This document shows, piece after piece, positions 20,145 to 42,869 of a DNA stretch of 64,000 nt (positions within the stretch are counted from its first letter, which is position 1; each line of letters starts with the position of its first letter). The notes under the pieces were generated by a model. The model was not told the DNA's origin. It worked only from the letters and a program-made list of their open reading frames with translations, and ran no database searches. A program made the translations under genes and the position numbers. The stretch is from IMG/VR virus record IMGVR_UViG_3300022866_000322, positions 124,001 through 188,000 of that record. One strand, written 5' to 3'.

Positions 20145-21249
20145 CCATATTCCTTTCTTTGGCATCAGGCGACAGTACCAAGATATTAAAGATGAATTAC
20201 TGGACGTTACTGATCAAGTGTACGCTAGTGGGCAAGTGCTTGATGGCAACTATACAGAAAAGTTTGAAAGAGAAATAGCACTCAGATGCAACCGTAGGCA
20301 TGCTATTGCAGTTAACAGTGGCACACAGGGACTATCCTTTGCTACCAAAGCATTAACGGATAGTCAAAACAGCCATATACTGTTACCCACACTTAGTTTT
20401 CCGGCCACACTAAATGCTGTTAACCAAAATAATAATTTTATTGATTTTTGCGACATTGATGATCACGGAATAATAGATTTAGACAGTTACAATGCACGAG
20501 TTGATCATACAACAGATGTTATTGTGCTGGTTAATCTTTTTGGCAACACTGTGGACTACGATCGTTTTAGAATGCATACAGAATTCTTTAACCAGGATGT
20601 TGCTGTACTTGAAGATGCCGCACAGAGTTTTGGTGCTAGTTACAAAGACATACCCAGTGGCAAAATGGGTGCTGTGAGTGTATTAAGTTTTGACCCCACA
20701 AAGAACTTTAACAGTTACGGATCCGGTGGCATGGTGTTGACTGATGACGAAGACATTGCGTACCACGTACTTAATTTACGTGACAATGGTAAAGCCAGTG
20801 ACCATGGCTATTGGGGCACCAATAGTAAAATGAGTGAAGCAGACTGTGCCCAAATGTTAGTTAAACTACAGCACTTTGATTCATGGCAGAAGCGTAGGTC
20901 TGACATTGCCCATTTTTGGATAGAAAACATGCCAGAGGAAATAATTGTGCCAATGCCCAGTACTGAGTTCACAGAGCATGCCTGGAGCAAATTTGTTATT
21001 CGAACATACCCTTCACGAGATAGGCACGATCTAATAGATTATCTATCCAACAGCCACATAGATACTAAGGTTCACTATACACAAGGACTATATGATCTAC
21101 CAACGGGCCTAGCGGCGTCAAATAATGTGTTTTTAAGCACTGAACGGTTCACAAAACACTGTTTAAGTCTACCTATATACCCTGAACTCACTGACATAGA
21201 GGTAGAACGTATAGTAGACACTATATACGAGTTTTATAGAGGCTCGTAA
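20134..21249 (+). CDS. DegT/DnrJ/EryC1/StrS sugar aminotransferase
   Basis: AVNSGT, EDAAQSFG, SFDPTKN..SYGSGG, NSKMSE, LSLPIYP. Confidence 0.92.
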   Translation: MATDHIPFFGIRRQYQDIKDELLDVTDQVYASGQVLDGNYTEKFEREIALRCNRRHAIAVNSGTQGLSFATKALTDSQNSHILLPTLSFPATLNAVNQNNNFIDFCDIDDHGIIDLDSYNARVDHTTDVIVLVNLFGNTVDYDRFRMHTEFFNQDVAVLEDAAQSFGASYKDIPSGKMGAVSVLSFDPTKNFNSYGSGGMVLTDDEDIAYHVLNLRDNGKASDHGYWGTNSKMSEADCAQMLVKLQHFDSWQKRRSDIAHFWIENMPEEIIVPMPSTEFTEHAWSKFVIRTYPSRDRHDLIDYLSNSHIDTKVHYTQGLYDLPTGLAASNNVFLSTERFTKHCLSLPIYPELTDIEVERIVDTIYEFYRGS

Positions 21250-23098
21250 AGTATTGTTGTAGCCAGTCCCAATCAAAACTTAACATGAGTTTGTTATAAT
21301 TACCCCCGACACTCTTGTAATAGATCACAGCATCGTTAGCCCCATTAATGCACCACTCAGCATGTTGGCCATGTGCTACTGTGGTCCAAACCTTAAGTCT
21401 ATGCTCTGTTTCTAGTGTGGGCTCTGTATCCATAAACAGTTTTAGTTTAAGCACTTCTCTAAATGCTGTACGCCACGTCATCCAAGGACTTTGGTTAAAG
21501 TGTGCTACGCCTGACTGTAGTGGTACTGACTCGTGTGGTTGGCTCAGTGTAAAGTCAATCCCGGGATCGTTGTTTTCTAATACCAAACGTTTGTTGTAGG
21601 CAATCATGCCTTGGTGTCCATACTCCAGCCCGTTTACAGGATTAACACTATTAAAAATATAATGCTTAGGCTCTTGCCAATAGTCCGGGCGCCAGTTAAA
21701 ATTAAATGCTGGACTAATTTCTAGTTTAGCAAACACTGCAAAGAACCACGGTGTAGTACTTTGCCTGGCCGCTTCCTGGTATGCGGCTGTTCTACCGTTA
21801 ACACCACGCACCCATTTTACTCTAGGACTTGTAGTAAGCCTATTACCTGACGCGGCAACATCAAATGCATAACGCAGTTCATCTGAGGTACAGTAAGTTA
21901 AATGGTTGTAATACTTGCGTTCGTCAGGCTCACCGTTGCTGATGTACACAATATCAAGATTCTGTTCCAGCACATGATATTCACCTTTGGTCTCTATTAC
22001 ATACGGGTAGTCATACATTTGTGTTTTTAAATCTACCTTCACATCCTTGGGTACTAAACTTGATGCACCACTTAGGCTAACACGTTTGGCTACACGATCC
22101 TTGGCATGCCACAAACAAAAATGGTAATTCATGTTTAGGTATTTTTGATTGGTAAACAGTGTATAGGGAAATTTAAAATCGTGATTTTTAACTTCTTCTA
22201 TTAGATTATCATGATCATACACAACTGTTGGTATTGGAAACCATCTCACAGTTTGGTCATCGCAATAGTTAATCACATTAAACCAGTCCAGCAGTTCTAG
22301 TTCATACAATTGTTGTCGGATGCTCTCTACACGAATATAGAATGTATCACCACGACGATTATTGCCACTAGGAAACACATGTATCATGTTACGTTGTGCT
22401 TGGTCCGGGTGCCAACTAAAATCAAACGTGCTGTAATCACACAGACTGCTGATAACCCACACATACTCTGTTGTGGCTAAGTTTATGATACGTTTAAACA
22501 CATTCAAGTGACTATCCACGTAACGTGTGCTTTTTATTGTAGGGTGTTGTTCACGCAAACTTTCCAGTTGATCTTTACTCTGTTCATTCATAAAGTCCAT
22601 GTAGAATATTTGCGTACTGTTGGTCTTAACTTTTTGGCTACTCATAAACTTAATACCAGCAGTGCCGCGATACACAGGTCCACCTTGTCGTTGCCACTGT
22701 GTAGGGAAATGGTATTCGTATTCTGGTTCTAGATCGTCAGGATGCCAACTGTAATCAAAGTCTGTATCATCAACCTCTTTGGGCGTGATCCAGTTTGTCT
22801 TATCTTGTATGCGTTTTATTTCACTGGTGTGGAAGTTGTATTCTTCGTTATGTGCTGTAAGTGGACTGGCCAGGTATGCTCCGCCTGTGCGTTGCCATTG
22901 CGTACTGAAACTGTGTACATGATCTGCTTCCCACGGCACAGGTACAAAATTAAAATTAAAATTTGAGTAATCATTGCCCCCATAAATATACCAGTAGAAG
23001 CGTGTACGACTTTGATCTGCCGCATCCCTAAGACTACTAGCAGGTTTCTCAAATTCAAATAAGTTGGGCTTTGGCCCGTAATAAAAAACATCAAACAT
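21221..23098 (-). CDS. Multi-repeat glycosyltransferase-like (GT-A) protein
   Basis: Four internal F[DN]F.W.P..W....H.F-type repeats. C-terminal domain (DIVYISNGEP...NGLEYG...WRTAFRE) is paralogous to 39631-40560. Confidence 0.55.
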   Translation of the reverse strand: MFDVFYYGPKPNLFEFEKPASSLRDAADQSRTRFYWYIYGGNDYSNFNFNFVPVPWEADHVHSFSTQWQRTGGAYLASPLTAHNEEYNFHTSEIKRIQDKTNWITPKEVDDTDFDYSWHPDDLEPEYEYHFPTQWQRQGGPVYRGTAGIKFMSSQKVKTNSTQIFYMDFMNEQSKDQLESLREQHPTIKSTRYVDSHLNVFKRIINLATTEYVWVISSLCDYSTFDFSWHPDQAQRNMIHVFPSGNNRRGDTFYIRVESIRQQLYELELLDWFNVINYCDDQTVRWFPIPTVVYDHDNLIEEVKNHDFKFPYTLFTNQKYLNMNYHFCLWHAKDRVAKRVSLSGASSLVPKDVKVDLKTQMYDYPYVIETKGEYHVLEQNLDIVYISNGEPDERKYYNHLTYCTSDELRYAFDVAASGNRLTTSPRVKWVRGVNGRTAAYQEAARQSTTPWFFAVFAKLEISPAFNFNWRPDYWQEPKHYIFNSVNPVNGLEYGHQGMIAYNKRLVLENNDPGIDFTLSQPHESVPLQSGVAHFNQSPWMTWRTAFREVLKLKLFMDTEPTLETEHRLKVWTTVAHGQHAEWCINGANDAVIYYKSVGGNYNKLMLSFDWDWLQQYFTSLYKTRI

Positions 23099-24356
23099 GT
23101 ATAATATATATAGTCATAATGAGAACATCTTAAATTTAGCTAAAAGTATTATAACAGAATGTTCCCTAATGTACCTACATCCTTTTGGATCAACTCAACC
23201 AGAAAATGTTGAAATAATAGGAGGTAACGACAATGGACCAATGGTTGTAATTTATGATCAAGAACCTCTTGACTTGTTTTATAACACACCTTTATTTAAT
23301 TACATTAACGATGTCCATAGAGATTTACAAGGTGAATTCAGACCAATGATTTTGCTAAGCACAGAAAGACATAGTGAGGAGAAAGAAAAGATACTTAAAC
23401 ATTACAATGCGGTAGATGTTAATTACTTCTTCCATGCGTTTTGTGCAAGTGATTGGTATAGAGGTTATAGATATAATGTTAACATTACTGATCCATCAAA
23501 AAGAAAACTGCAAAAGAAGTTTGTTTGTTTTAATAGAATTACTGGCAACATGCGTGTTTATAGAAGTCTGCTAGTAGCAGAATTAGCTGATGTCATCGAT
23601 CAAGGGTATGTTAGTTATAGTCACAACTGCCCAGTACACAACGAAACATGCCGTGATGCATTAGTTAACAATAATAAAAAGTTTCTCTTTAGCCGTGAAT
23701 ATATTAACCAAGTTGTAGCAAAAGTAAACAGTTTGCCGCGCTCATTGCGTATCGACAGTTCCGAAGCAGACATCCCCAATGGAAGTCAAAGTATAGGACC
23801 ATTACCAGAATTAATGTCAAGTTTCTTACATGTAGTAACTGAGACTATGTTCTGGGACGATCGTACACACTTAACTGAAAAAATATTCAAACCTATTGTT
23901 GCTAAACAACCGTTTGTACTTGTTGGTTGCGCAAACAATTTAGATTATTTCCGTAGTTACGGATTTAGAACATTCGGTCGTTGGTGGGACGAAAGTTATG
24001 ATGCTATTACTGATCCTGTACAGCGTTTAGAAGCCGTAAGTAATATTATAAAAAGTATATGCAAGAAATCATTGGGTGAGTTAGAGGACATGTTACAGGA
24101 CATGACAGAAGTGCTGGAACACAATTATAATTTATTTTACAGCACAGACTTTTTAGATAAAGCCTGGGCCGAACTTGCATCCAATTTTGAAAAAGTAAAT
24201 GATAAATTGATTGATTGGACTAAGCCAGACATAGGTGTTCCTCTGCCACCGATCGGGAGAGATCAGATATTAGAAATAAGACAAAATGCTACGAGCTATG
24301 AAGAGTCTCTCAAGACAATAGCTGAAGTTGAATCCCAGATTTTGTCAAAAACTTAA
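23097..24356 (+). CDS. Glycosyltransferase-like protein (GT10/GT-B-like C-terminal motif)
   Basis: HVVTET...LTEKIFKPI..KQPFVLVG..YGFRTF..WWDESYD, resembling the TEK motif of alpha-1,3-fucosyltransferase-like proteins. Confidence 0.5.
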   Translation: MYNIYSHNENILNLAKSIITECSLMYLHPFGSTQPENVEIIGGNDNGPMVVIYDQEPLDLFYNTPLFNYINDVHRDLQGEFRPMILLSTERHSEEKEKILKHYNAVDVNYFFHAFCASDWYRGYRYNVNITDPSKRKLQKKFVCFNRITGNMRVYRSLLVAELADVIDQGYVSYSHNCPVHNETCRDALVNNNKKFLFSREYINQVVAKVNSLPRSLRIDSSEADIPNGSQSIGPLPELMSSFLHVVTETMFWDDRTHLTEKIFKPIVAKQPFVLVGCANNLDYFRSYGFRTFGRWWDESYDAITDPVQRLEAVSNIIKSICKKSLGELEDMLQDMTEVLEHNYNLFYSTDFLDKAWAELASNFEKVNDKLIDWTKPDIGVPLPPIGRDQILEIRQNATSYEESLKTIAEVESQILSKT

Positions 24357-24771
24357 TACCGCTGTCATCGCGATATTCTTGCTCGTAGTAAACTTCTTTA
24401 ATACCTGCTTGATGCATGCCTTTTGCGCAGTCCAAACAAGGACTGTGTGTAATAAACATTGTAGCACCATTACCACTTTCAGTAGACCTTGCCAACTTCA
24501 TTAGTGCGTTCATTTCAGCATGAAGTACTTCTGGTTTACTTTTAAGCTCTATCACATGATGCTGATGTGGATTGGGATATTTCTTTAGGTGTTCATTTTC
24601 AACTTCAATTTCGCAATTGTTATCCCAACCACTAGGCATTCCATTATAGCCAATGCTAATGATCCTATTGTCTTTTACGACAATAGCGCCTACTTGTAGT
24701 CTACGTGCTGTACTACACTCCGCAAATGCATGCGCAGTTTTCATGTATGCTTTTATGTGCTTCTGTTTCAA
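24310..24771 (-). CDS. dCMP deaminase
   Basis: VGAIVV, GYNG, HAEMNA, PCLDC. Confidence 0.92.
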   Translation of the reverse strand: MKQKHIKAYMKTAHAFAECSTARRLQVGAIVVKDNRIISIGYNGMPSGWDNNCEIEVENEHLKKYPNPHQHHVIELKSKPEVLHAEMNALMKLARSTESGNGATMFITHSPCLDCAKGMHQAGIKEVYYEQEYRDDSGIKFLTKSGIQLQLLS

Positions 24772-25181
24772 AGTTTACCTTCTGCTCGTAACTGTTCTCT
24801 AATTTGTGTAGCACTAATCTGATGTATATCGTTGCCAAGATCATGTTCTGTAAATGTGTATCCAACACCTCTACCATAACTGATGTCAACAATATTAGGT
24901 ACTTGCGTTATAATGTATTCCTCACCATACGTAAAGCCTGCGGCAAACAGTCCTTGAGTGATGTTGTTTTTTACTGTGCCGAAGTTAAATGGATTATCAG
25001 TTTGTGCGCCCGTTCGTCCACCACCTGCGTCTTCACCCACAATGCCTCCAACATCACGTACCATAATACATACTTGTCCTGACTCCAGCAGTGCTTTTTT
25101 AAACAGTGCAGTGTGTCCGTCGTGCCAAGGTTGCCAACGACCCAACATTTCTGTAGTTGGTTTCTGATTATCAAATGCCAT
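24768..25181 (-). CDS. HxGH cytidyltransferase-like nucleotidyltransferase
   Basis: GRWQPWHDGH, NPF, YGRGVGY, ISATQIR. Confidence 0.75.
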   Translation of the reverse strand: MAFDNQKPTTEMLGRWQPWHDGHTALFKKALLESGQVCIMVRDVGGIVGEDAGGGRTGAQTDNPFNFGTVKNNITQGLFAAGFTYGEEYIITQVPNIVDISYGRGVGYTFTEHDLGNDIHQISATQIREQLRAEGKL

Positions 25182-25387
25182 TATTTTGTTACTCCATATT
25201 TTATGTGGTTGTACCATACACGTTCGTGTGCATAGTATAATATAAATTTAATTACCAAGTCTGCCGCAAATACCAATCCTACTGCCTTGGCAGGTAAACC
25301 AAACCACCATGCAATCAGTGCTGTTACAGTACTAGCAATTATTCGCCATGTAATTGCTTTTGCTAAGTGTCTACGTTTAGATATCAT
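25181..25387 (-). CDS. Small membrane protein (DUF2061-like)
   Basis: KAITWR, two hydrophobic segments, YYAHERVW. Confidence 0.75.
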   Translation of the reverse strand: MISKRRHLAKAITWRIIASTVTALIAWWFGLPAKAVGLVFAADLVIKFILYYAHERVWYNHIKYGVTK

Positions 25388-25841
25388 GTACGTTTATCTT
25401 TATCTTCTTATCATTGATAAAAGGCCACAAGTACTTGCTTACAATCTGCAAAAGTTCTTGGTGCGTATTTTCAAACCATTCCGCAACATGGTAGTCATAT
25501 TCATCACGTTCTAAAGGCTCAAACATTTTGTTTGTATCTTCAAACCTACCTTCTTTAATTGTGTCCATCCAGATAGTATAGTCTGCACCAAACCCTGCTC
25601 TTGCTTGTTTTGTGGGTGCAATAAAATCTGCTATACAGATCTTACCTGCCTTGACAATACCGTCTGCCAGATACTTCATGCGTAGTGCTTGTCGCATACG
25701 CCCTTCTGGGGAAAAGTCCCAGTCGTCGTATTCTTTTCTAATAGCGTCAGCGTTGATATGCACTGCTCCAATTAGTTTGGCAAATGGTTCTGCTAGTGTA
25801 GTTTTACCGCTTCCGGGTAATCCGCATATTAATATTTTCAT
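25377..25841 (-). CDS. Adenylyl-sulfate (APS) kinase-like P-loop kinase
   Basis: GLPGSGKTT, NADAIR, DWDFSPEGR.RQ, DFIAP, FEP. Confidence 0.75.
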   Translation of the reverse strand: MKILICGLPGSGKTTLAEPFAKLIGAVHINADAIRKEYDDWDFSPEGRMRQALRMKYLADGIVKAGKICIADFIAPTKQARAGFGADYTIWMDTIKEGRFEDTNKMFEPLERDEYDYHVAEWFENTHQELLQIVSKYLWPFINDKKIKINVHDI

Positions 25842-25851
25842 GCTATTCTTT

Positions 25852-26508
25852 CTAATTTAGTTGAAAATGATCCAAGTTGAATTCGTGGTCGCCTGGAGAA
25901 TAATCTGTAATTAGCTTGCATAATTGGGTCGCAATGACAGAATTATTCTCTTTACTAAAATGATTTAGTCTGGTGTCTTGATGCAATGTGTTAGGATGTG
26001 CTGTGTCCTTGTATATTTCTGCAATACTAATCGATGTTAAGTCTGGAAGTACTTGTACACCACCTAGTAGGTTTCGAAATGGCAACGAACTAGGAAAACC
26101 ATGTAAATGGACAGTTTTGATGTTAGAATATTCTTTATTGATTTCTTCAAACCATTTCTGCTGTGCCCATTCTGCAAAAGGTGCATTTTCTAAATACTTG
26201 TAATACAGTTTCACTGCTAGTCCTACTTCTGTTTTAGGAGTAGGATCAAATTTATTGATGTTTGCTATTTCATAGTTAGGGCAATCGAACGGGATTCTTT
26301 CTGCGAAACTGTGAACAAAAACAAGGGCATCGGTTTCTGTTGCCAACATATCTTTAATATATTTTTGATTCAAGAAATGTCGATAAGCCCACCATGGGTG
26401 TCCGCTATACCCTGCAACAACTAAATTTAAATTTAGTAATTGTGCTAGTTCCTGGGGCCAACCTTTACTAGCACAGAAACTGTCACCGACTACAACTAAA
26501 TTTTTCAT
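25852..26508 (-). CDS. SGNH-like protein
   Basis: VVVGDSF...W, C-terminal LNHFSKENN; AT-rich. Confidence 0.55.
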   Translation of the reverse strand: MKNLVVVGDSFCASKGWPQELAQLLNLNLVVAGYSGHPWWAYRHFLNQKYIKDMLATETDALVFVHSFAERIPFDCPNYEIANINKFDPTPKTEVGLAVKLYYKYLENAPFAEWAQQKWFEEINKEYSNIKTVHLHGFPSSLPFRNLLGGVQVLPDLTSISIAEIYKDTAHPNTLHQDTRLNHFSKENNSVIATQLCKLITDYSPGDHEFNLDHFQLN

Positions 26509-28599: not shown

Positions 28600-28697
28600 T
28601 TGTAAATAAAAGGATCTCGTTTTTTAAGTTCTTTGAGCTTTTTACGATAGCGTATTTCTAGGATGATTCTATTCCAAAGGTTCTTTAACCAGTTCAT
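28596..28697 (-). CDS. 33-aa basic micropeptide MNWLKNLWNRIILEIRYRKKLKELKKRDPFIYK (not in ORF track)
   Basis: Read manually. Fills the gap between two SGNH genes; its TGA overlaps the next ATG (ATGA). Confidence 0.65.
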   Translation of the reverse strand: MNWLKNLWNRIILEIRYRKKLKELKKRDPFIYK

Positions 28698-33133: not shown

Positions 33134-33140
33134 AGTCTTG

Positions 33141-35661: not shown

Positions 35662-36994
35662 TGTACCAATCTGCTAGTTCTGGAAAAGTCTCTGTCAAGT
35701 TCTTTCCTCTGCGTTTGTCATACTGTTCGTGAAACTGTTTAAAGTCGTTGTGTAGTTTGGGCATGTCGAATGTGTCTGAATGTGGTGTTTCTACTACATC
35801 CAAGTAATCAATTAATCGTATGATGTGGTTAATCTCATGTTCATGCAACAACTGCCCAATTGGTCGTGCCGTTTGATAATCCAACCATGTGCGTAAACGT
35901 TCTTTGTGTTTAATTCTAATTTCTTCAGGGAACACCAACGGACTTTGGAAACTAGGGAAGCGTAAGATATTAAGTGTAAAACTTACAGCATGTTTACCGT
36001 GTTTTGATTTCCATCCAACTAATAAATCTAAAAAGGCAGTCAGACTTTCCAAACACAATGCATTAATTGTACACATTACATGTAACCCACGCAATTTATT
36101 TCTATGTACTTTTAGTACTTTGTTTATGTTATCACACCACAGTTCCCATTCCAGGCCGTCACGTATATACTCTGCTTGTTTATCCCAACTTTCGTTGCTA
36201 GTATATAGGTCTATAGGTTGGTCTACACTGTCGAACAATCTATCTACATCTATATCCTTACCTAAGTTACTGTTAATCGCCAAGCGTGTTTTACTCTTGC
36301 CTTTGTTTTGTTTAAACCAGTCTATAAGTTTCCAGGTGTAGCCACTCATTAGTGGTTCGCCACCTGTAATGCGTAGTTCGTCTAGCGTTCGGTGTAGGTC
36401 TGATTCCCACCACTTGAAGAACGCCTCAACATAAGGATTTTCCTCGCCGAATTTGTACAACTGCGCACTGTCATGAGCATGGGTAAAATGATTACGCCCG
36501 TCAGAAACAAGCCCAGTATAACTTCCGTTTGATTTGATATCCTTAACCCATGTACTACTAAAAGCAGGGTTGCAATAACTGCAAGCAAATTGACAAGTCC
36601 TATCGAAACTGATTTCCAAAGTTCGTAAGTCCACGTCTCCTGTTGCATCTGATTGATATGCATCGTCTAATTCCTTTATAGTATATATTTTACTTTTATA
36701 CACACGGTCAGAAATGTTATCACGTTTGATATCTTCAATCTTCCAGCAGTACTCACAACCTGGCGGACGTTCTCCTGCCTGCATCTGCGCCCTGTCTTGC
36801 TTCTTTTCGGGCGTGTTGTGTATTGCTTTGGGATTACGCTTAACTTCTTCAATATCAACTTTGTGTGCTGGTGGATGATGACAACTGGTACTCATGCCAC
36901 TACCAAGCCATATAGTAGCGTTATACCATTTTGCTCCACAAAAGCTCGCTGACTTTGTGTCTAATATTTGTTGTTTAAATTCTAAATCATTCAT
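35651..36994 (-). CDS. Radical SAM enzyme with N-terminal SPASM/Twitch-like domain (3 of 7)
   Basis: CGAKW..SCHH..CEYCW; CQFACSYC; TGGEP. Confidence 0.92.
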   Translation of the reverse strand: MNDLEFKQQILDTKSASFCGAKWYNATIWLGSGMSTSCHHPPAHKVDIEEVKRNPKAIHNTPEKKQDRAQMQAGERPPGCEYCWKIEDIKRDNISDRVYKSKIYTIKELDDAYQSDATGDVDLRTLEISFDRTCQFACSYCNPAFSSTWVKDIKSNGSYTGLVSDGRNHFTHAHDSAQLYKFGEENPYVEAFFKWWESDLHRTLDELRITGGEPLMSGYTWKLIDWFKQNKGKSKTRLAINSNLGKDIDVDRLFDSVDQPIDLYTSNESWDKQAEYIRDGLEWELWCDNINKVLKVHRNKLRGLHVMCTINALCLESLTAFLDLLVGWKSKHGKHAVSFTLNILRFPSFQSPLVFPEEIRIKHKERLRTWLDYQTARPIGQLLHEHEINHIIRLIDYLDVVETPHSDTFDMPKLHNDFKQFHEQYDKRRGKNLTETFPELADWYNGL

Positions 36995-38253
36995 TTTAAA
37001 TTATATTTTCCAAATTCGGCAACTAGCCAAGGAAAGGTTTTCCTCCAATTTATGTTTCTTCTCAAATCAATATCATTTAAAAAGTGAAACAAACTTGTTA
37101 TTTCCTTGACATTCGGTTCTTTGCTGTTGCTTTGCTTTCTTAATCCATCTAAGTAGTCTTTACTAAGCTGTTCTTCCTCTGTGTCAACAGGCTTTAATGC
37201 CAATGCCTTTTGAAAGTCTTCTTCGAATATGTTTCCGAATATGTCTATTCTTTGATTAGTAGGATCATTTACAGAGTTTTGATACAAGTAAATCTTTCTA
37301 ACCTTAGACCATTCCCTAACTTTTTCAAGTAATATAGGATAAGTTTTTATAGTCATTGGAGTAAGTGTTGAGTTAATAACTAAGTTAATATACTTCTTAG
37401 ACAATATGTACAAAAAGTTTTCTTCCCATTGTTTTAAATCTAACGGAAATCTAACATACTCGGCTTCCGGCCCCCAATTGTCCAAACTTGCTGTAACTTG
37501 AAACCCACCTATTTTTCTTTTTGCTATTAATTTCTCTACTTTACTTATAATTTCAACTAATCTATCTTTCTTAACACTAAGATTGGTAAAAATTTGTAGT
37601 GTAAGTTTCGGACTGGGGTATTGATCAAATATATCCAAACATTCTATAAATTCTTTTTGAAATAAAGGTTCTCCACCTAAAAAGTTAAACTGGCTTAAAT
37701 TATGCCCTTCGTTCTTTAACCAATCGTATACCTTTTGCTTGTTGGCATCGAAGCTATTTGCATTCTTAAAAATTACGCCATGTCTCGAATAACTCCACTT
37801 TTGACTTGTGTATTGCCCGACATGCTTGAAGTTTTCTTCTGCCCACATAGAGCTGAAAAGTTCTGAACAGTATAGACATTTTTGATTACACAAGTTGCTG
37901 AAATAAACTTCCAACACTGTAGGTGTCACACTGGTTGCTATCGGATTGTCCTTGAGTTCAGGGGGAGTTGGGACGCCGGGCATTGCCAGATTTGTTGTTC
38001 TATCGCTCTCGCCTCCTGCTTGTTCTATGTCTCTGCAGTATTCGCATCCTTGGCCAGGCCACTTGCCTTCTAGCATCATTTCCCTTGATTTAACTTTCTC
38101 TTCTGTATTATGAAAATCAAATGTATCTAAATCAAATTCATGTCGGTTGCAACGATGACAACTTGCTGTTTCGCCTAAACTGAGATATATGGTGCTCCAT
38201 CCCCATTTCAGACGGCAAGCAGTTTCTGTTTTTATAGGAAATATTTTATTCAT
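36991..38253 (-). CDS. Radical SAM enzyme with N-terminal SPASM/Twitch-like domain (2 of 7)
   Basis: CRLKW..SCHRC..CEYC; CNQKCLYC; LGGEP; ASLD. Confidence 0.92.
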   Translation of the reverse strand: MNKIFPIKTETACRLKWGWSTIYLSLGETASCHRCNRHEFDLDTFDFHNTEEKVKSREMMLEGKWPGQGCEYCRDIEQAGGESDRTTNLAMPGVPTPPELKDNPIATSVTPTVLEVYFSNLCNQKCLYCSELFSSMWAEENFKHVGQYTSQKWSYSRHGVIFKNANSFDANKQKVYDWLKNEGHNLSQFNFLGGEPLFQKEFIECLDIFDQYPSPKLTLQIFTNLSVKKDRLVEIISKVEKLIAKRKIGGFQVTASLDNWGPEAEYVRFPLDLKQWEENFLYILSKKYINLVINSTLTPMTIKTYPILLEKVREWSKVRKIYLYQNSVNDPTNQRIDIFGNIFEEDFQKALALKPVDTEEEQLSKDYLDGLRKQSNSKEPNVKEITSLFHFLNDIDLRRNINWRKTFPWLVAEFGKYNLK

Positions 38254-39631
38254 TGTGTGCGTGGTACCTGCATTCTTCCCAAAACTCTTTCATTTGTGGG
38301 AACGTTGCTAAAAAGTTAGTCTTACTACGTTTGTCTTGCTCGTTAAAAAATCTATAAAAGTCTGCACGTTGCATTATAACATACTCTGGTGTTAATTTGC
38401 TACCTTCGCGCATCCAATCTAGAACTCTGTGCATACGTGCTATTTCATAATCTTTAAATCCAACATACATGTTTTCTTCTGTTTCGCGATGTAATTCCAT
38501 CCACTCTATAATGCCCGCTAACCTGTCTGCATACACAGGCGGGAGTATCTGCAAACTTTGCCAAGTTGGCTGGCGCAGTATGGGAGTGTCAAACCAAACA
38601 CGTTGGTATGTATGACTCTGAGTTGCTCGTAAACGCAATATTTCTTGCAATAGATCCTGTAAACCTAATATGTTTAGATTATTCATTGTTATAATAAACG
38701 TTAAACTATTTCGGTACGGAATCTGAGTAAGGAAACTGTCACACCGCTTTATAATCTTCTGATAGTCTGCACCGTATCTGATATAATGTGCATGTTCTGC
38801 TATGCCAGTATCAATACTAACATACTGCATAAAGTGTTCTATGTTGCTGTTACATAGTTTTTCTACATAATTTAAGTATTGGATCCACAACTTTTCATCT
38901 ACACTAAAGTTACTGGTAACATCTATGTGCAGATCAGGCTTGGGAAACGCCAACACATAATCAAACACTTTGAATGTGTTACGATCCATAAGTGGTTCGC
39001 CGCCAGTCATCCTAAAGTGTTTTAGTTTAGGATACAGTTCGGGCCACCATTTCCAAAATGCTTCCACATACGGATTCTCTTCGCGAGCAGGGATAGGTCT
39101 ACGTCTGCCTGCAAAGTGTTCCGGGGCATTGTGTGGTTTGCTGGTTGGGTATGCGCCAAATCTTTTTATTTCGTCAGCCCAAGTACTGCTAAACTGAGGG
39201 CTACAGTAACTACACTTAAGATTACAAGCGTTGTTAAAATTGACTTCCACATAACTCGGTATTTCATCTTCATCGCCAGTGCTCTCCATTATACGGTCAA
39301 AGTGTTCTGCGGCCCAAGGCTCGCCTGAGCGATAATGTCTATCACTAAGGTTACCCATGTCTTCTTGTGTCCAACAATAACTACATTCGTTTGGACGTTC
39401 CTGCTTGATCATTATTTTGCGTTGTTCTTTTTTGTGCTTGGTATTGTGCAGTGCGCTAGGATTATCTTTTAGTTCAGCGGCATCTATTTGGTGCAGTGGC
39501 GGATGATAACAACTGTTGTTCAACCCTGTAGGCAAGTGCAGACTTACCTGTTGCCATTTGGCAAGGCACATTCCGTTTCCAAGTTTGTCACGCATCTGTT
39601 CTGCGCTATTCATAAAAACTGATTTAGCCAT
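38246..39631 (-). CDS. Radical SAM enzyme with N-terminal SPASM/Twitch-like domain (1 of 7)
   Basis: CLAKW..SCYH..CSYCW; CNLKCSYC; TGGEP; VSID. Confidence 0.92.
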   Translation of the reverse strand: MAKSVFMNSAEQMRDKLGNGMCLAKWQQVSLHLPTGLNNSCYHPPLHQIDAAELKDNPSALHNTKHKKEQRKIMIKQERPNECSYCWTQEDMGNLSDRHYRSGEPWAAEHFDRIMESTGDEDEIPSYVEVNFNNACNLKCSYCSPQFSSTWADEIKRFGAYPTSKPHNAPEHFAGRRRPIPAREENPYVEAFWKWWPELYPKLKHFRMTGGEPLMDRNTFKVFDYVLAFPKPDLHIDVTSNFSVDEKLWIQYLNYVEKLCNSNIEHFMQYVSIDTGIAEHAHYIRYGADYQKIIKRCDSFLTQIPYRNSLTFIITMNNLNILGLQDLLQEILRLRATQSHTYQRVWFDTPILRQPTWQSLQILPPVYADRLAGIIEWMELHRETEENMYVGFKDYEIARMHRVLDWMREGSKLTPEYVIMQRADFYRFFNEQDKRSKTNFLATFPQMKEFWEECRYHAHNE

Positions 39632-40560: not shown

Positions 40561-40900
40561 AATATTCTGTGTTGTTGTGGGTTTCATCTTGCTCTAACAA
40601 TAAGCCTGCGTGGTTCTTTACTACTTGAAAATCACCTTCACCGTGTACCAATTGTCTTTTATATCCTGGGTTGAACACTTTTACTTTTAGTTCACCATCT
40701 TTTACTCGTGCGTACTTGTGCATGTTTTCGTATTCGTCTTGTTCGACAACAATATAATCACCTTCAAGGTGCGGCTCAGTCATTGACTGGCCTACAATCT
40801 CTCCATTGAGATCATGGTATACTCTGTACTCCTTTACTATTTCTTTAGGAGTACCAACCAGTGCATTAACTTCTGCTAAAAACTTTTCAAGCTCGTTCAT
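40541..40900 (-). CDS. Hypothetical protein
   Basis: ~119-aa ORF overlapping both neighbours. Confidence 0.65.
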   Translation of the reverse strand: MNELEKFLAEVNALVGTPKEIVKEYRVYHDLNGEIVGQSMTEPHLEGDYIVVEQDEYENMHKYARVKDGELKVKVFNPGYKRQLVHGEGDFQVVKNHAGLLLEQDETHNNTEYYGYTDY

Positions 40901-41708
40901 ACTGTTCAATAAGTTCTGCTGTGCACCATTCTTTTACATGATAGTGTACAGGGTTAAGTTGATTAATGTTGTTGATCCTGATTACTGGTGGGTCTGTTTC
41001 ACACATAACTGTGTCTGTCCATTTACTTGACCCTGCCCATCCTTGTATGTGTGGTTTCATATGAACAAAGTTGAAGTAATCTAAACTGGGCATTGTGCAA
41101 TTTTCAACGCCATACATCTTAGCGGCAAGTGCGTATATAACATCAGTGCTAGGACGTTCTTCCCTGCAGTTTATCAACACGTTATCTCTAATATGATTAT
41201 AGTGTTTATACAAAGTGCGAGCAAGTTGGAAAAATTCAGTTGCCTCACGTGTAAATCTAAAATACATCATACCATTATAGATGTTTGGCAAGTCGTTGTC
41301 AACCCAGAACTTTCTGTATCCAGTGTCAACAACCACTTGATCCTGAAGATTCCTGCAATGCGTTGCAAGCACAACAGGTTTCAGTCTAAGTGCGTCCCAC
41401 CAGTGATCCACATTGCGTGTGAACAACAAATCCGCTTCTACCTTAATTGTTTCTTTAAAAGGTGAACATGAAAATAGGTCTGGTTCACGTTCCATAGGCC
41501 AGTCAGTCGCATTTACAGTTCTAACATAATCAAACACCAGGCTCTGCTTGTCTGTAATCAACTCTTGTGTAGTTGGGTCCACTGCTACACAATATCGTGC
41601 ATCGGGCATTACTAACTTTATACTAAGTGCTTGCAAGTATGCCATTTTCAAATAGTCTGCACCAATTGCCAGGGTCATGAACCCTTGCTGTTCTTTGTGA
41701 TCAAACAT
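40887..41708 (-). CDS. Nucleotide-diphospho-sugar transferase-like protein (GT8/GT-A-like)
   Basis: YLKMAYLQALSIK, SPFKETIKVEADLLF, YNGMMYF, STDVIYA, HMK, PVHYH; paralogue of the next gene. Confidence 0.6.
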   Translation of the reverse strand: MFDHKEQQGFMTLAIGADYLKMAYLQALSIKLVMPDARYCVAVDPTTQELITDKQSLVFDYVRTVNATDWPMEREPDLFSCSPFKETIKVEADLLFTRNVDHWWDALRLKPVVLATHCRNLQDQVVVDTGYRKFWVDNDLPNIYNGMMYFRFTREATEFFQLARTLYKHYNHIRDNVLINCREERPSTDVIYALAAKMYGVENCTMPSLDYFNFVHMKPHIQGWAGSSKWTDTVMCETDPPVIRINNINQLNPVHYHVKEWCTAELIEQYERA

Positions 41709-42525
41709 CAAGTATTTCCTCAACAAACTCTTCAAACGCATCACTGACTAAAAAGTTCTTGTCCATAATATGTACATTGTGCTTTGGTATGGTGATTGCT
41801 AAATCTTTGAGTCGCACAATAATCTTGTCTTTTAAATTTGTGTCCATGCGCACAACTTCTTGCACCACAGTAAACATCTTCCACGGAATAATGTTCTTAG
41901 ACGTGGAACAATATCCATTTAGTATTGTGTTAGCCATAGCAAACGAATAATCATTGCGATAACTTGTACCGTCTACCATAAACAGGTTTCTGTAATAAGC
42001 CCAGTTGCGCTGTATACGTCCTATTAGATTAAAGAACAGCTCACTGCGTGGGCATTTTCTAAACATTACCACAGTAGCCCACAAGTAAGGCAAACTTACT
42101 TGCCCCATACGTGCTGGCATGGTTTCTGCACTACTGTTGCTGTGTTCCATAACACGATAATCATAGTCCAGTTCCATTAACTTTAATAAACCGTCGTCTA
42201 ACACCAAGTAGTCTGTGTCTATCAGCAGTGTGTTATCGTATGGACTATGTTCGTATGCAGTATAACGACCGTGATTCTTCCACTGCTTTACTTCTTTAGA
42301 TATATGGTCGTTTCTAAAGTTGTTGCCTGTGTAGTTGACACGCACAACATTGTCATAATTATGCTTGGGCTGTGACTCTGTGTCAGTTACTAGCGTGATA
42401 GGCAAGTTGAGATGTTGTTCTACTAACCGTGCAGAAAGGTCTGCGATACGAACATAGTCAACATCAACAGTGTTATGAGCAAAAAATACTACACCTTTAG
42501 ACTCTGCGGAGTCGTCTGAGTTCAT
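41701..42525 (-). CDS. Nucleotide-diphospho-sugar transferase-like protein (GT-A, DxD)
   Basis: SPYDNTLLIDTDYLV, WATVVMF, RNDYSFA, HIMDK. Confidence 0.65.
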   Translation of the reverse strand: MNSDDSAESKGVVFFAHNTVDVDYVRIADLSARLVEQHLNLPITLVTDTESQPKHNYDNVVRVNYTGNNFRNDHISKEVKQWKNHGRYTAYEHSPYDNTLLIDTDYLVLDDGLLKLMELDYDYRVMEHSNSSAETMPARMGQVSLPYLWATVVMFRKCPRSELFFNLIGRIQRNWAYYRNLFMVDGTSYRNDYSFAMANTILNGYCSTSKNIIPWKMFTVVQEVVRMDTNLKDKIIVRLKDLAITIPKHNVHIMDKNFLVSDAFEEFVEEILDV

Positions 42526-42811
42526 TATATTGTTGATGCCAGTCATTCATTACCGCTTGATATCGTTGTTGAGCTAATTCTAAGAATTCTGTTCTGTCTA
42601 CTTTGATTGGATTCTCATATGTGTCTTCTAAATACAGTTCGTCACTGTTCCACGTTGCCACGAATGATATCAGGTCAGGCGTGATCTTAAACAACCCATT
42701 ACCGTATGTCATGTGCAACTCTGTTTGAATGTGTTCTCTTAGTGTGCGTCTGTTGGCTTGATAGTCCGTGGCCTGCTTGATTTCTGCAACTATGTTGTCT
42801 AATTCTGTCAT
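42497..42811 (-). CDS. Hypothetical protein, first gene of the modification cluster
   Basis: 104 aa downstream of a consensus promoter. Confidence 0.7.
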   Translation of the reverse strand: MTELDNIVAEIKQATDYQANRRTLREHIQTELHMTYGNGLFKITPDLISFVATWNSDELYLEDTYENPIKVDRTEFLELAQQRYQAVMNDWHQQYNELRRLRRV

Positions 42812-42821
42812 GGTATTATAT

Positions 42822-42860
42822 AAAAAGAATGGATAAGCATATTATACTGCCTATCCATTC
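42822..42860 (-). terminator. Rho-independent terminator after the structural genes
   Basis: Minus strand GAATGGATAGGCA-GTATAATA-TGCTTATCCATTC-TTTTT: 13-bp stem (one G-U) plus U tract. Confidence 0.75.
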
Positions 42861-42869
42861 TGTTGTCAA
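42841..42869 (-). promoter_or_regulatory. Consensus sigma70-type promoter driving the modification cluster
   Basis: Minus strand TTGACA (42869-42864), 17 bp, TATAAT (42846-42841). Confidence 0.8.

What the first reader, a model, noticed from the sequence alone, without database searches (positions are those of the whole stretch)
21221..42869. Phage-encoded ~21.6-kb tailoring cluster: 5 glycosyltransferase-like genes, 7 radical SAM enzymes, carbamoyltransferase, 3 SGNH proteins and an APS-kinase module, directly behind the tail genes
Seen: a tightly coupled minus-strand run (ATGA/TAATG overlaps) starting at a perfect sigma70 promoter (42869). Order: two GT-A paralogues, a DxD GT, seven radical SAM genes, a hypothetical, SGNH, micropeptide, SGNH, NodU/CmcH carbamoyltransferase, SGNH, APS kinase, DUF2061, HxGH nucleotidyltransferase, dCMP deaminase, then a GT-repeat gene. 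One antisense GT-like gene interrupts the run. NDP-sugar epimerase and DegT aminotransferase genes converge on it from the other strand. Known: Twitch-type radical SAMs such as BtrN oxidise aminosugars, NodU/TobZ carbamoylate sugar hydroxyls, and SGNH proteins add or remove O-acyl groups on glycans. Inference: a secondary-metabolite-style assembly line that builds and heavily tailors a glycan, most plausibly on virion proteins or as a DNA hypermodification. I know of no characterised phage pathway with this composition.
Basis: partly seen in the sequence, partly recalled or inferred. Interest (0 to 1): 0.9.

Follow-up and report, generated by a model that had tools for sequence, protein, structure and literature searches.

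The report
Jumbo-phage radical-SAM sugar-tailoring operon
A widespread family of very large freshwater phages carries, next to its tail-fibre genes, a conserved 21-kb operon with seven unusual radical SAM enzymes, sugar-building enzymes, a carbamoyltransferase and a tiny conserved peptide; it probably makes a heavily decorated sugar product by chemistry nobody has characterised, and its target is still unknown.

Summary
The cluster is real. About 22 tightly coupled minus-strand genes (21221-42869) start at a perfect sigma-70 promoter. Gene order is conserved in about 50-120 IMG/VR jumbo-phage contigs.

Confirmed:
- Seven radical SAM genes. Six pass NCBIfam NF033640, the N-terminal-twitch family of unknown function.
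- A NodU/CmcH-type carbamoyltransferase.
- An APS-kinase-like kinase, DUF2061, an NMNAT-like nucleotidyltransferase and a dCMP deaminase.
- Convergent DegT and SDR dehydratase genes.

Overcalled:
- Only three of the five "glycosyltransferases" have support, and it is weak (GT8-like pair) to moderate (DxD GT-A).
- The repeat protein has lost its DxD motif, and the antisense gene has no GT evidence.
- Only two of the three "SGNH" genes are supported (DUF6071).

New here:
- The 33-aa micropeptide is the best-conserved gene. It is a carbamoyltransferase companion, probably SxtK-like.
- Five core radical SAM paralogues are one-to-one orthologues of members of an array in a Bacteriovoracaceae chromosome.
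- The trio of radical SAM, DUF6071 and carbamoyltransferase recurs in Ralstonia phage RsoM2USA and in a Crocinitomicaceae glycan locus.

Best reading: a soluble pathway that builds and tailors a sugar or glycan, perhaps on virion fibres. A genuine ThyA plus DHFR argues against hydroxymethyl-pyrimidine DNA hypermodification. The target is unproven.

The parts
42841..42869 (-). perfect sigma-70-type promoter (TTGACA-N17-TATAAT) in front of the operon
   Evidence: 4 perfect sites in the window against 0.03 expected; conserved upstream of orthologues
42497..42811 (-). g104: conserved acidic 104-aa protein, first gene of the operon, function unknown
   Evidence: no family hit; 50-64% identical orthologues at the same position
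41701..42546 (-). GTa1: GT8-like (glycogenin-like) candidate glycosyltransferase with invariant DxD (D110, D112)
   Evidence: no Pfam hit
40887..41744 (-). GTa2: paralogue of GTa1 with ExD at the same place (public gene aa, starting 12 codons in)
   Evidence: hhalign 97.8% with GTa1; glycogenin E 0.015; gene call
   Evidence: tblastn 28-45% identity at the same position in about 28 relatives; called as 119 aa
39631..40587 (-). GT3: divergent GT-A glycosyltransferase with invariant IDGDN, plus a helical C-terminal domain
38246..39631 (-). rS1: N-terminal-twitch radical SAM, core paralogue
   Evidence: NF033640 306 bits; orthologue of Bacteriovoracaceae copy 8514
36991..38253 (-). rS2: N-terminal-twitch radical SAM in a variable slot
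   Evidence: NF033640 218 bits; mostly 24-30% hits in relatives, rising to about 54% in a few
35651..36994 (-). rS3: N-terminal-twitch radical SAM, core paralogue
   Evidence: NF033640 295 bits; groups with the RsoM2USA and Bacteriovoracaceae copies
34333..35661 (-). rS4: N-terminal-twitch radical SAM, core paralogue; its group holds the single-copy bacterial genes
   Evidence: NF033640 410 bits, SPASM 41-104 then Radical_SAM 150-315
33141..34346 (-). rS5: N-terminal-twitch radical SAM, core paralogue
   Evidence: NF033640 357 bits
31865..33133 (-). rS6: divergent radical SAM with N-terminal SPASM-like domain in a variable slot
   Evidence: NF033640 92 bits, below the cut-off of 170; SPASM 24.5 bits; absent from most relatives
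30582..31868 (-). rS7: N-terminal-twitch radical SAM, core paralogue (public aa)
   Evidence: NF033640 300 bits
29459..30637 (-). hyp392: conserved protein with a confident model but no known fold match
   Evidence: pLDDT 82, pTM 0.82; best Foldseek PDB E 0.8; no PDB or Pfam hit
28669..29481 (-). SG1: DUF6071-like, SGNH-like protein (N-terminal GDSF)
   Evidence: DUF6071 17.8 bits, below cut-off; homologous to SG2
28596..28697 (-). mp33: 33-aa basic micropeptide ending DPFIYK; companion of the carbamoyltransferase and the best-conserved gene of the cluster
27964..28599 (-). SG2: DUF6071 family, SGNH-like protein
   Evidence: DUF6071 38 bits against a cut-off of 27; weak GDSL hits; relatives beside N_Twi radical SAM genes in 15 of 65 bacterial loci
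26505..27998 (-). CmT: NodU/CmcH/TobZ-type carbamoyltransferase
   Evidence: Carbam_trans_C 176 bits, Carbam_trans_N 125 bits; 43.5% identical to the RsoM2USA homologue
25852..26508 (-). SG3: 218-aa protein with an N-terminal GDS motif only; present in few relatives
   Evidence: no family hit; does not match the SG1 or SG2 profiles
25377..25841 (-). kin: APS-kinase-like P-loop kinase
25181..25387 (-). DUF2061 small hydrophobic protein
   Evidence: 46 bits; the only hydrophobic segment in the cluster
24768..25217 (-). NT: NadM/NMNAT-like HxGH nucleotidyltransferase; fused or paired with the kinase in other phages
   Evidence: (phrog_10255)
24310..24771 (-). dCMP deaminase; probably nucleotide supply rather than glycan chemistry
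23097..24356 (+). asGT: conserved antisense ORF of unknown function (public aa); a GT identity is not supported
21221..23098 (-). GTrep: repeat-containing protein whose C-terminal domain (residues 425-595) is GT3-like but lacks the DxD
20134..21249 (+). DegT-family sugar aminotransferase (best match PseC-like), convergent
19161..20144 (+). SDR NDP-sugar 4,6-dehydratase/epimerase, convergent

Best explanation
The region is a conserved operon, probably read by the host sigma-70 RNA polymerase, that encodes a soluble pathway for building and heavily tailoring a sugar-based product.

**Inferred flow**
1. The convergent SDR dehydratase and DegT aminotransferase make an NDP-4-amino-4,6-dideoxy-type sugar.
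2. The GT8-like pair and the DxD GT-A enzyme transfer sugars to an acceptor. The DxD-less repeat protein may serve as a non-catalytic binding or scaffold partner.
3. A fixed team of five N-terminal-twitch radical SAM enzymes, plus one or two variable ones, each carries out a distinct radical step at unactivated C-H positions. Oxidation, epimerisation, deoxygenation or C-C/C-O coupling are the usual options for twitch enzymes.
4. The DUF6071/SGNH-like proteins add or remove acyl groups.
5. The carbamoyltransferase, working with the 33-aa DPFIYK peptide, O-carbamoylates the product.
6. The APS-kinase-like kinase and the NMNAT-like adenylyltransferase make a PAPS-like or dephospho-CoA-like activated donor.

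**Target.** The product is most likely attached to virion surface proteins, meaning the Ser/Thr-rich tail-fibre-like proteins encoded directly upstream. This would parallel mycobacteriophage and giant-virus virion glycosylation.

**Shown versus inferred.** Shown: gene identities, conservation, paralogue orthology and recurrent partnerships. Inferred: every substrate, the order of steps and the target.
For: -
- Tight coupling and a conserved promoter.
- Synteny from the tail-fibre genes through to GTrep, DegT and the epimerase holds in about 50-75 contigs at 35-78% amino-acid identity. It also holds in marine relatives binned into MAGs, which keep tail-fibre homologues beside the cluster.
- Each of the five core radical SAMs has 58-83% identical 1:1 orthologues, so they are not redundant.
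- The radical SAM plus DUF6071 plus carbamoyltransferase plus DPFIY-peptide set recurs in RsoM2USA. It also recurs in a Crocinitomicaceae chromosome with GT2, a UbiA-GT4-GT1-GDSL fusion, UDP-sugar dehydrogenase and epimerase.
- GT3 relatives are fused to GT1/GT28 domains and give GT2 hits. The GT3 model's Foldseek tail consists of GT-A enzymes, including the Che8 and Gordonia phage transferases.
- No cluster protein except DUF2061 has a membrane-like segment, and there is no flippase, polymerase or phosphoglycosyltransferase.
- The upstream fibre-like proteins are 20-23% Ser+Thr.
Against: - No experiment and no direct computational link ties the product to virion proteins. Adjacency to tail genes is seen only within one clade and its marine relatives, where the whole genome region is syntenic.
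- A strong sigma-70 promoter suggests early or middle rather than late expression.
- In RsoM2USA the mini-module lies near DHFR, not near recognised tail genes.
- The Bacteriovoracaceae array has eight radical SAMs and none of the cluster's other protein families. Single-copy bacterial genes sit in uninformative contexts. The radical SAM substrate may therefore not be a glycan.
- GT assignments for GTa1/GTa2 are marginal, and there is none for asGT.
Confidence: 0.4

Rival explanations
1. **Host-envelope remodelling.** The operon makes modified NDP-sugars and decorations that enter the host's own LPS, capsule or peptidoglycan pathways during infection. The purpose could be superinfection exclusion, keeping progeny from re-adsorbing to debris, or marking the cell.
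For: - A sigma-70 promoter is compatible with early expression.
- The closest bacterial locus with the same trio contains a UbiA-GT4-GT1-GDSL fusion, GT2 and an ABC transporter, typical of lipid-linked surface glycans.
- Peripheral GT-A enzymes need no membrane segment.
- N_Twi radical SAM genes are frequent in Bdellovibrionota, Polyangiaceae and Lysobacterales, organisms that manipulate prey envelopes.
Against: - The cluster has no initiating phosphoglycosyltransferase, flippase, polymerase or exporter, and no membrane protein except DUF2061.
- The position directly behind tail-fibre genes is conserved.
Confidence: 0.2
2. **Radical SAM team acts on a protein or peptide.** The radical SAMs would perform RiPP-like or structural-protein post-translational modification, for example cross-links or epimerisation in fibre proteins or in the small g104/g122 proteins. 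The sugar genes would be a separate, merely neighbouring function.
For: - SPASM/twitch enzymes are often peptide maturases. Profile hits include anSME and SkfB.
- The Bacteriovoracaceae array orthologous to the five core paralogues has no GT-like protein or carbamoyltransferase, and it has a 110-aa ORF in its middle.
- Two conserved small acidic proteins sit at the head of the phage operon.
Against: - No RRE/PqqD-like domain or recognisable precursor is present.
- g104 and g122 have no homologues in the bacterial loci.
- The recurrent partners of the radical SAMs are DUF6071/SGNH-like proteins and a carbamoyltransferase, which normally act on sugars or small molecules.
- The N-terminal domain aligns with the BtrN twitch domain.
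Confidence: 0.15
3. **Diffusible small molecule.** The product would be an aminoglycoside-like, nucleoside-like or Nod-factor-like compound, carbamoylated and possibly sulfated, that acts on the host or on competitors.
For: - The enzyme mix (twitch radical SAM, DegT, dehydratase, carbamoyltransferase with SxtJ/K-type companions, APS-kinase-like module) resembles natural-product tailoring sets.
- All proteins are soluble.
Against: - There is no exporter, resistance gene or core scaffold synthase.
- The operon is conserved as part of a lytic jumbo-phage backbone next to tail genes.
- A burst-limited infection leaves little time for a secreted metabolite to pay off.
Confidence: 0.12
4. **DNA hypermodification.** The transferases and tailoring enzymes would decorate bases in phage DNA to evade restriction.
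For: - The cluster neighbours nucleotide-metabolism genes: dCMP deaminase inside it, ThyA and DHFR beside it.
- 7-deazaguanine pathway genes (FolE, QueD, QueE) lie in the same window.
- Phage GT-A and GT-B enzymes are known to glycosylate DNA (Pyle et al. 2024, seen only as a reference in PMC12619734).
Against: - ThyA passes the thymidylate synthase equivalog cut-offs and is paired with DHFR, so it is not a hydroxymethylase.
- No hydroxymethylase, TET/JBP, 5-hmdU kinase or aGPT-Pplase-like gene was recognised in the window.
- The trio also occurs in a bacterial surface-glycan-type locus.
Confidence: 0.08

Closest known systems
NCBIfam NF033640 (N_Twi_rSAM, twitch domain-containing radical SAM protein)
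   Same: Six of the seven radical SAM ORFs score 218-410 bits against a cut-off of 170. They show the defining order: an N-terminal SPASM/twitch Cys domain followed by the CxxxCxxC core.
   Different: The family has no assigned function, and no paper found uses the name for a characterised enzyme. Here it occurs as 5-11 tandem, non-redundant paralogues. rS6 falls below the cut-off.
BtrN-type twitch radical SAM enzymes (2-deoxy-scyllo-inosamine dehydrogenase) and relatives (anSME, SkfB, BlsE, MoaA, viperin)
   Same: They share the radical SAM core. The BtrN twitch domain aligns to the N-terminal 14-90 of the family profile at E 4e-5.
   Different: The auxiliary-cluster domain is N-terminal here and C-terminal in BtrN. 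Identity is low, and no substrate can be transferred by homology.
Virion glycosylation operons of mycobacteriophages (Che8-type; Freeman et al. 2023, cited in PMC12619734), and giant-virus capsid or fibril glycosylation (from my own knowledge)
   Same: Soluble GT-A transferases are encoded beside structural genes, and there is no lipid-carrier machinery. The GT3 model's Foldseek matches include the Che8, Ardmore and Gordonia phage transferases.
   Different: Those systems have a few transferases and methyltransferases only. They lack a radical SAM array, carbamoyltransferase, DUF6071 proteins and an APS-kinase-like module. Glycans on virions are not shown here.
SxtI-SxtJ-SxtK arrangement: an O-carbamoyltransferase with two short companion ORFs of unknown function
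   Same: A carbamoyltransferase is accompanied by a very small conserved ORF. In the bacterial loci an SxtJ-like Pfam hit and a 49-aa ORF ending PFIYSLF lie beside the carbamoyltransferase. The literature notes such companions next to sxtI (PMC2885083).
   Different: The phage peptide (33 aa) keeps the N-terminal xWLKxxW/RKK and C-terminal DPFIY motifs but has a charged helix where the bacterial form has a hydrophobic segment. The phage has no SxtJ-like gene. The SxtK/DUF5989 name comes from memory and was not checked with a profile.
Nod-factor tailoring set (NodU carbamoylation, NodPQ/NodH sulfation, NodL acetylation) - functional analogy from my own knowledge
   Same: It combines a NodU-family carbamoyltransferase, an APS-kinase-type activation module and acyl-handling enzymes acting on an oligosaccharide.
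   Different: The NodU equivalog score is far below cut-off (134 against 1000). No sulfotransferase, NodC or NodA was recognised, and radical SAM enzymes play no part in Nod-factor synthesis.
Phage DNA glycan hypermodification systems (T4-type glucosyl-hmC and diverse glycans)
   Same: They are phage-encoded glycosyltransferases near nucleotide-metabolism genes.
   Different: They need a hydroxymethylase or TET enzyme. Here ThyA is a genuine thymidylate synthase paired with DHFR.

Membership tests
Radical SAM superfamily | CxxxCxxC cluster motif and GGE(P) SAM-binding motif | tested here: met
   All seven ORFs have both motifs in aligned columns. Pfam Radical_SAM is at or above cut-off for four of them, below cut-off for rS2 and rS7, and absent for rS3.
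NF033640 N_Twi_rSAM | Whole-protein score of at least 170 bits, with the twitch/SPASM-like Cys domain N-terminal to the core | tested here: met
   Six ORFs score 218-410 bits. rS6 (31865-33133) scores 92 bits and does not meet it. The SPASM Pfam hit lies N-terminal to Radical_SAM in rS4, rS5, rS6 and rS7.
NodU/CmcH carbamoyltransferase family | Carbam_trans_N and Carbam_trans_C domains above Pfam gathering scores | tested here: met
   125 and 176 bits against cut-offs of 24 and 27.
NodU (equivalog NF041651) | Score of at least 1000 bits | tested here: not met
   134 bits. This is a family member, not NodU itself.
GT-A glycosyltransferase (GT2-like) - GT3, 39631-40587 | Rossmann-like GT-A fold with a DxD motif after a beta strand, plus a match to a GT family model | tested here: inconclusive
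   IDGDN is invariant. The model has pLDDT 78. Foldseek hits are nearly all GT-A or nucleotidyltransferase folds, but E is at least 0.01. There is no Pfam hit on the window protein. Relatives give GT2 hits, and some are fused to GT1/GT28 domains.
GT8 (glycogenin-like) - GTa1 and GTa2 | GT8 model match through the DxD and the C-terminal HxxGxxKPW region | tested here: inconclusive
   Glycogenin chains are essentially the only PDB matches (all 14 with the merged profile; 17 of 20 with the GTa2 profile), at E 0.015-0.03. They align only over the N-terminal half through the DxD. No Pfam or NCBIfam hit.
Glycosyltransferase - asGT, 23097-24356(+) | Any GT family or fold match | tested here: not met
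   No PDB, Pfam, NCBIfam or PHROG match for the protein or its ten-member alignment.
Glycosyltransferase - GTrep, 21221-23098 | GT-A domain with a catalytic DxD | tested here: not met
   Residues 425-595 match the GT3 profile at 36.7 bits, but the DxD position reads FAVFAK.
SGNH/GDSL hydrolase | Pfam GDSL model above cut-off, with blocks I (GDS), III and V (DxxH) | tested here: inconclusive
   SG2 scores 21 bits on Lipase_GDSL_2 against a cut-off of 33, and 38 bits on DUF6071 against 27. SG1 is sub-threshold on DUF6071 but homologous to SG2. SG3 has only the GDS motif and matches nothing.
Adenylyl-sulfate (APS) kinase | Pfam APS_kinase above cut-off; NCBIfam equivalog cut-off; P-loop, DGDxxR, FSxxxR and FxSP motifs | tested here: inconclusive
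   Pfam 38 bits against 21, but covering only 5-90 of 152 profile positions. NCBIfam apsK 28.5 bits against 139, so not met. The profile hits PDB APS kinases at E 9e-12 with the motif positions aligned.
NadM-type NMN adenylyltransferase | GRxQPxHxGH and ISxTxxR motifs; NCBIfam cut-off | tested here: inconclusive
   Both motifs are invariant. PDB NadM/NMNAT matches at E 5e-5. NCBIfam 21 bits against 127, so not met.
Thymidylate synthase ThyA (bears on the DNA-hypermodification rival) | Equivalog cut-offs of NF002497 and TIGR03284 | tested here: met
   374 bits against 327, and 362 bits against 108. DHFR is adjacent.
Virion glycosylation system | Glycan chemically detected on virion proteins and dependent on the phage transferases | not testable with these tools
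   Only position next to the fibre genes and fold resemblance to the Che8-type transferases are available.

The most novel reading that the evidence does not exclude
A portable team of five or more N-terminal-twitch radical SAM enzymes performs a new kind of multi-step radical tailoring of a glycan or glycoconjugate. The team is inherited as a set and shared between abundant aquatic jumbo phages and bacteria that prey on other bacteria (Bdellovibrionota and others). It works with DUF6071 proteins and with a carbamoyltransferase plus its DPFIY micropeptide. The result would be a previously unseen, chemically hardened surface decoration on virion fibres, or on the attacked cell's envelope, used in the interaction between attacker and prey.
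Probability: 0.25. Interest if true: 0.9.

Novelty: new variant of a known kind. Interest (0 to 1): 0.7.

Why it matters
- The GT3 protein alone has more than 8000 90%-identity clusters in public metagenomes, on contigs up to about 370 kb. This operon therefore belongs to a very common group of freshwater, and some marine, jumbo phages.
- Virus-encoded glycan pathways are known. None is known with an array of 5-11 radical SAM enzymes, and the N-terminal-twitch family they belong to has no assigned function.
- Each core paralogue has its own orthologue in a bacterial array, which shows a fixed multi-enzyme chemistry waiting to be discovered.
- Cultured carriers (Ralstonia phage RsoM2USA, Vibrio phage K566/K567) and a minimal recurrent unit (radical SAM, DUF6071, carbamoyltransferase, micropeptide) make the question directly testable.
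- The micropeptide result gives a first handle on the long-unexplained small ORFs that accompany SxtI/NodU-type carbamoyltransferases.

Tried and rejected
- **Megablast** of the whole cluster against 50,697 phage records found nothing.
- **Sequence searches** of the GT3, GTa1, hyp392 and asGT profiles, and of rS4 as a single sequence, against PDB gave nothing usable.
- **Pfam** at E up to 10 on all unassigned ORFs, and on all ten asGT homologues, returned noise only. The precomputed Pfam marks on the public gene calls also show nothing for them.
- **The hyp392 model** is confident but has no PDB fold match.
- **The first large protein search** with GT3 returned only close, unnamed relatives.
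- **Single-copy bacterial N_Twi genes** in Agaribacillus and Reichenbachiella sit in uninformative neighbourhoods. One look-up failed on the start codon.
- **hhalign** of the GT3 and hyp392 profiles against the unknown genes of the Bacteriovoracaceae array found no relation.
- **g104 and g122** have no homologues outside the phage clade.
- **A T4-type late promoter** (TATAAATA) is absent from the window.
- **Literature searches** found no description of the cluster or of the family's function. The "moraphage" paper reports four core GT orthogroups in another aquatic jumbo lineage, but it does not mention radical SAM genes and could not be tied to this clade.
- **NAD salvage for the kinase-NT pair:** I considered that the pair is a NadR-like salvage unit. 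The NT looks NMNAT-like, but the kinase is specifically APS-kinase-like, so this stays open.
- **Sulfate activation for the module:** I considered that it activates sulfate, but no sulfotransferase was recognised in the phage.

Full report
**What the window is**

The window is part of IMG/VR contig UViG_3300022866_000322, which is 221 kb long. It carries a baseplate wedge gene, a 4719-aa ORF and tail-fibre-like genes. The phrog_11259 protein at 48126-48833 is 39-48% identical to proteins of Atu_ph07, Phosso and Rak2-like jumbo myoviruses. Homologues of cluster proteins lie on contigs of 318-374 kb, and one source names its record "uncultured Caudovirales phage UFOVP257". The cluster has no megablast match in 50,697 phage records. 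No tRNA genes are present.

**Checking the observation**

- Junctions along the minus strand mostly overlap by 1-56 nt.
- A perfect TTGACA-N17-TATAAT lies 29 nt upstream of the first gene. Four such perfect sites occur in the window against 0.03 expected.
- A promoter with at most 2 mismatches is found at a similar distance in 19 of 26 orthologous positions.

Family searches confirm the following:
- Seven radical SAM genes, all with CxxxCxxC and GGEP.
- A carbamoyltransferase with both domains, DUF2061 and a dCMP deaminase.
- DegT and an SDR dehydratase/epimerase.

Six radical SAM ORFs pass NCBIfam NF033640, a family defined by a twitch/SPASM-like domain placed before the radical SAM core. The seventh, 31865-33133, scores only 92 bits against a cut-off of 170. 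A profile of the family aligns its N-terminal 14-90 with the C-terminal twitch domain of BtrN at E 4e-5. Its core aligns with 8vpo, viperin, anSME, SkfB, BlsE and MoaA.

**The glycosyltransferase claim**

None of the five "GT-like" ORFs hits a glycosyltransferase model in Pfam, NCBIfam or PHROGs, even at lax thresholds.
- **GTa1 and GTa2** are true paralogues (hhalign 97.8%). Their profiles match essentially only glycogenin (GT8), through the DxD, but at E 0.015-0.03.
- **GT3** has an invariant IDGDN motif.
  - Its AlphaFold model has pLDDT 78.
  - Only weak Foldseek matches come back, but they are almost all GT-A or nucleotidyltransferase folds: hyaluronan synthase, PBCV-1 A64R, STIV A197 and HddC in PDB, and the Ardmore, GodonK and Che8 transferases and GT25 enzymes in BFVD.
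  - The family is large, with 1405 representatives at 50% identity. Some members are fused to GT1/GT28-type domains or give Pfam GT2 hits.
  - I accept it as a divergent GT-A enzyme.
- **GTrep** carries the same domain at residues 425-595, but the DxD position reads FAVFAK, so it is probably not catalytic.
- **The antisense ORF** is conserved but has no detectable relation to any transferase.

That leaves three plausible transferases, one degenerate copy and one unknown.

**The SGNH claim**

SG2 is a DUF6071 member with weak GDSL hits. SG1 is its homologue. SG3 has only an N-terminal GDS motif, matches neither profile and is present in few relatives.

**The activation module**

- The kinase profile hits APS kinases at E 9e-12, with the P-loop, D-x-x-R, FS...R and F-x-x-P positions aligned.
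- The nucleotidyltransferase has invariant GRWQPWHxGH and ISATxIR motifs, and its nearest solved relatives are NadM-type NMNAT.
- The two are joined in one PHROG family, and apparently in single ORFs in some relatives.
- They also occur at 57-64% identity beside a single N_Twi radical SAM in more distant phages.
- A kinase of the APS type plus an adenylyltransferase suggests a PAPS-like or dephospho-CoA-like two-step activation. The substrate is unknown.

- Two conserved small acidic genes: g104 at the head of the operon, and g122 between GTa2 and GT3.
- The significance of the micropeptide at 28596-28697.
  - It is the best-conserved gene of the cluster, at 76-91% identity where its neighbours are 30-55%.
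  - Across 71 DNA versions, changes concentrate at third codon positions (437/324/1068), so it is translated and under purifying selection.
  - It stays directly upstream of the carbamoyltransferase even where SG1 and SG2 are absent.
  - Homologous ORFs ending DPFIY(K/R) precede the carbamoyltransferase in RsoM2USA (unannotated there), in several MAG-binned contigs and in a distant phage.
  - In true bacterial loci a 49-aa ORF with the same N-terminal and C-terminal motifs, but a hydrophobic middle, lies beside the carbamoyltransferase and an SxtJ-like gene.
  - The literature records two short uncharacterised ORFs beside the sxtI carbamoyltransferase (PMC2885083).
  - That the peptide is an SxtK/DUF5989 relative is my recollection.

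**Conservation**

- Using rS4 as bait gave 63 IMG/VR loci. GTrep as bait matched 124 stretches, of which 80 loci were fetched.
- The conserved order runs as follows:
  1. tail fibres, t309, g104, GTa1, GTa2, g122, GT3
  2. rS1, (variable slot), rS3, rS4, rS5, (variable slot), rS7
  3. hyp392, SG1, peptide, SG2, CmT, (SG3)
  4. kinase, (DUF2061), NT, (dCMP deaminase)
  5. antisense ORF, GTrep
  6. then the convergent DegT, epimerase, ThyA and DHFR genes
- It is kept at 35-78% amino-acid identity.
- Relatives have 5-7 radical SAM copies, and one has 11.
- ThyA and DHFR are also syntenic, so part of this conservation reflects a conserved genome backbone. Independent contexts therefore matter more.

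**Independent contexts**

- **Ralstonia phage RsoM2USA** (cultured, 344 kb) has DUF6071-like, N_Twi radical SAM, DUF6071-like, peptide, DUF6071-like and carbamoyltransferase (43.5% identity) genes in a row.
- **Vibrio phage K566** has four N_Twi-like genes together.
- **A scan of one genome per GTDB species** found 350 relatives. The closest are phage contigs binned into MAGs, including marine ones that keep tail-fibre homologues beside the cluster. The rest are bacterial.
- **A Crocinitomicaceae chromosome** has three N_Twi genes lying with a carbamoyltransferase, an SxtJ-like gene, the 49-aa ORF, a UbiA-GT4-GT1-GDSL fusion, GDSL-like proteins, a faint sulfotransferase hit, an epimerase, a UDP-sugar dehydrogenase and GT2.
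- **DUF6071-like genes** occur in 15 of 65 bacterial loci and are directly adjacent to the radical SAM gene in nine.
- **A Bacteriovoracaceae contig** has eight N_Twi genes in tandem beside rplU, rpmA and obg, and none of the cluster's other protein families was detected there.
- **A maximum-likelihood tree** pairs rS1, rS4, rS5 and rS7 each with a different member of that array (ultrafast-bootstrap support 99-100). rS3 falls in a 100/99-supported group with two further array members and the RsoM2USA gene. Single-copy bacterial genes fall in the rS4 group.
- The five core paralogues are therefore an old, co-inherited set with distinct roles.

**What it most likely does**

- The enzyme set points to sugar chemistry:
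  - NDP-sugar dehydratase and aminotransferase;
  - GT-A transferases;
  - twitch radical SAMs;
  - SGNH-like proteins;
  - a NodU-type carbamoyltransferase;
  - an activation module.
- The Crocinitomicaceae locus points the same way.
- No cluster protein except DUF2061 has a membrane-like segment, and no lipid-carrier machinery is present. The pathway therefore looks cytoplasmic.
- The conserved position behind Ser/Thr-rich fibre-like proteins, and the fold resemblance of GT3 to mycobacteriophage virion transferases, make virion glycosylation the leading target. This is inference only.
- Against it: the strong sigma-70 promoter, the different neighbourhood in RsoM2USA, and the GT-free bacterial array.
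- DNA hypermodification of the hydroxymethyl-pyrimidine kind is unlikely. ThyA passes both thymidylate synthase equivalog cut-offs and sits with DHFR and the dCMP deaminase. Modification of other bases is not excluded.
- I put about 0.4 on a virion-directed glycan. Smaller weights go to host-envelope remodelling, protein or peptide modification by the radical SAMs, a small molecule, and DNA.

**Novelty**

No paper found describes this cluster or assigns a function to the N-terminal-twitch family. Virus-encoded glycan pathways are a known kind of system. The radical SAM team, the DUF6071 partnership and the carbamoyltransferase micropeptide make this a new variant with unknown chemistry, in a very abundant phage group.

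Noticed in passing
window 28596-28697 (-); L232:11168-11278; L226:6479-6628 (-): A 33-aa peptide ending DPFIYK is the best-conserved ORF of the cluster. It always lies just upstream of the carbamoyltransferase. It is unannotated in Ralstonia phage RsoM2USA. Bacterial loci have a 49-aa version with a hydrophobic middle beside an SxtJ-like gene.
   Followed up: yes
window 1562-1590 (+), 12354-12382 (+), 41274-41302 (-), 42841-42869 (-); also 2801 (-) with a 16-nt spacer: Perfect sigma-70 consensus promoters occur far more often than chance (4 against 0.03 expected). One lies inside the GTa2 coding sequence.
   Followed up: partly
whole window: The T4-type late-promoter octamer TATAAATA is completely absent on both strands (0 against 5.5 +/- 1.9 expected).
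   Followed up: no
window 864-1556, 6011-6511, 6508-6852, 6852-7703, 4857-5393: GTP cyclohydrolase I, a QueD-like PTPS, a cupin, a QueE-like radical SAM and a phosphoribosyltransferase are present. This is a partial 7-deazaguanine pathway and suggests deazaguanine chemistry in this phage. QueC and DpdA were not recognised in the window.
   Followed up: partly
window 48830-62989 (-) and 1618-4056 (+): A 4719-aa ORF lies between the baseplate wedge and the fibre genes (faint FG-GAP hit). A separate 812-aa FG-GAP repeat protein sits behind a perfect promoter.
   Followed up: no
window 272-880 (+): A short (202-aa) DegT-like ORF matches only parts of the aminotransferase model. It may be a fragment or a split gene.
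   Followed up: no
window 13493-14806 (+): A large HNH endonuclease (phrog_1314) follows an ATPase gene.
   Followed up: no
Genome-contig loci L153-L221: Bacterial carriers of N_Twi radical SAM genes are rich in Bdellovibrionota (about 17 of 78 loci), with Polyangiaceae and Lysobacterales also present. These lineages prey on other bacteria. Bacteroidota and Elusimicrobia are also common. No statistical test was done.
   Followed up: no
L144 (Polynucleobacter MAG contig), L145-L152: Phage-like contigs with this cluster are binned into MAGs of Polynucleobacter, Legionellales, Verrucomicrobia, Betaproteobacteria, Rickettsiales and Haliscomenobacter. This is probably mis-binning, and at best a weak hint about hosts.
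   Followed up: no
L186 (Elusimicrobia MAG): Several N_Twi radical SAM domains are fused to long TPR-repeat N-terminal regions (proteins of 815-1078 aa) in a tandem array.
   Followed up: no
window 29459-30637 (-): hyp392 gives a confident model (pTM 0.82) with no match in PDB. It is possibly a new fold and is specific to this phage clade.
   Followed up: partly
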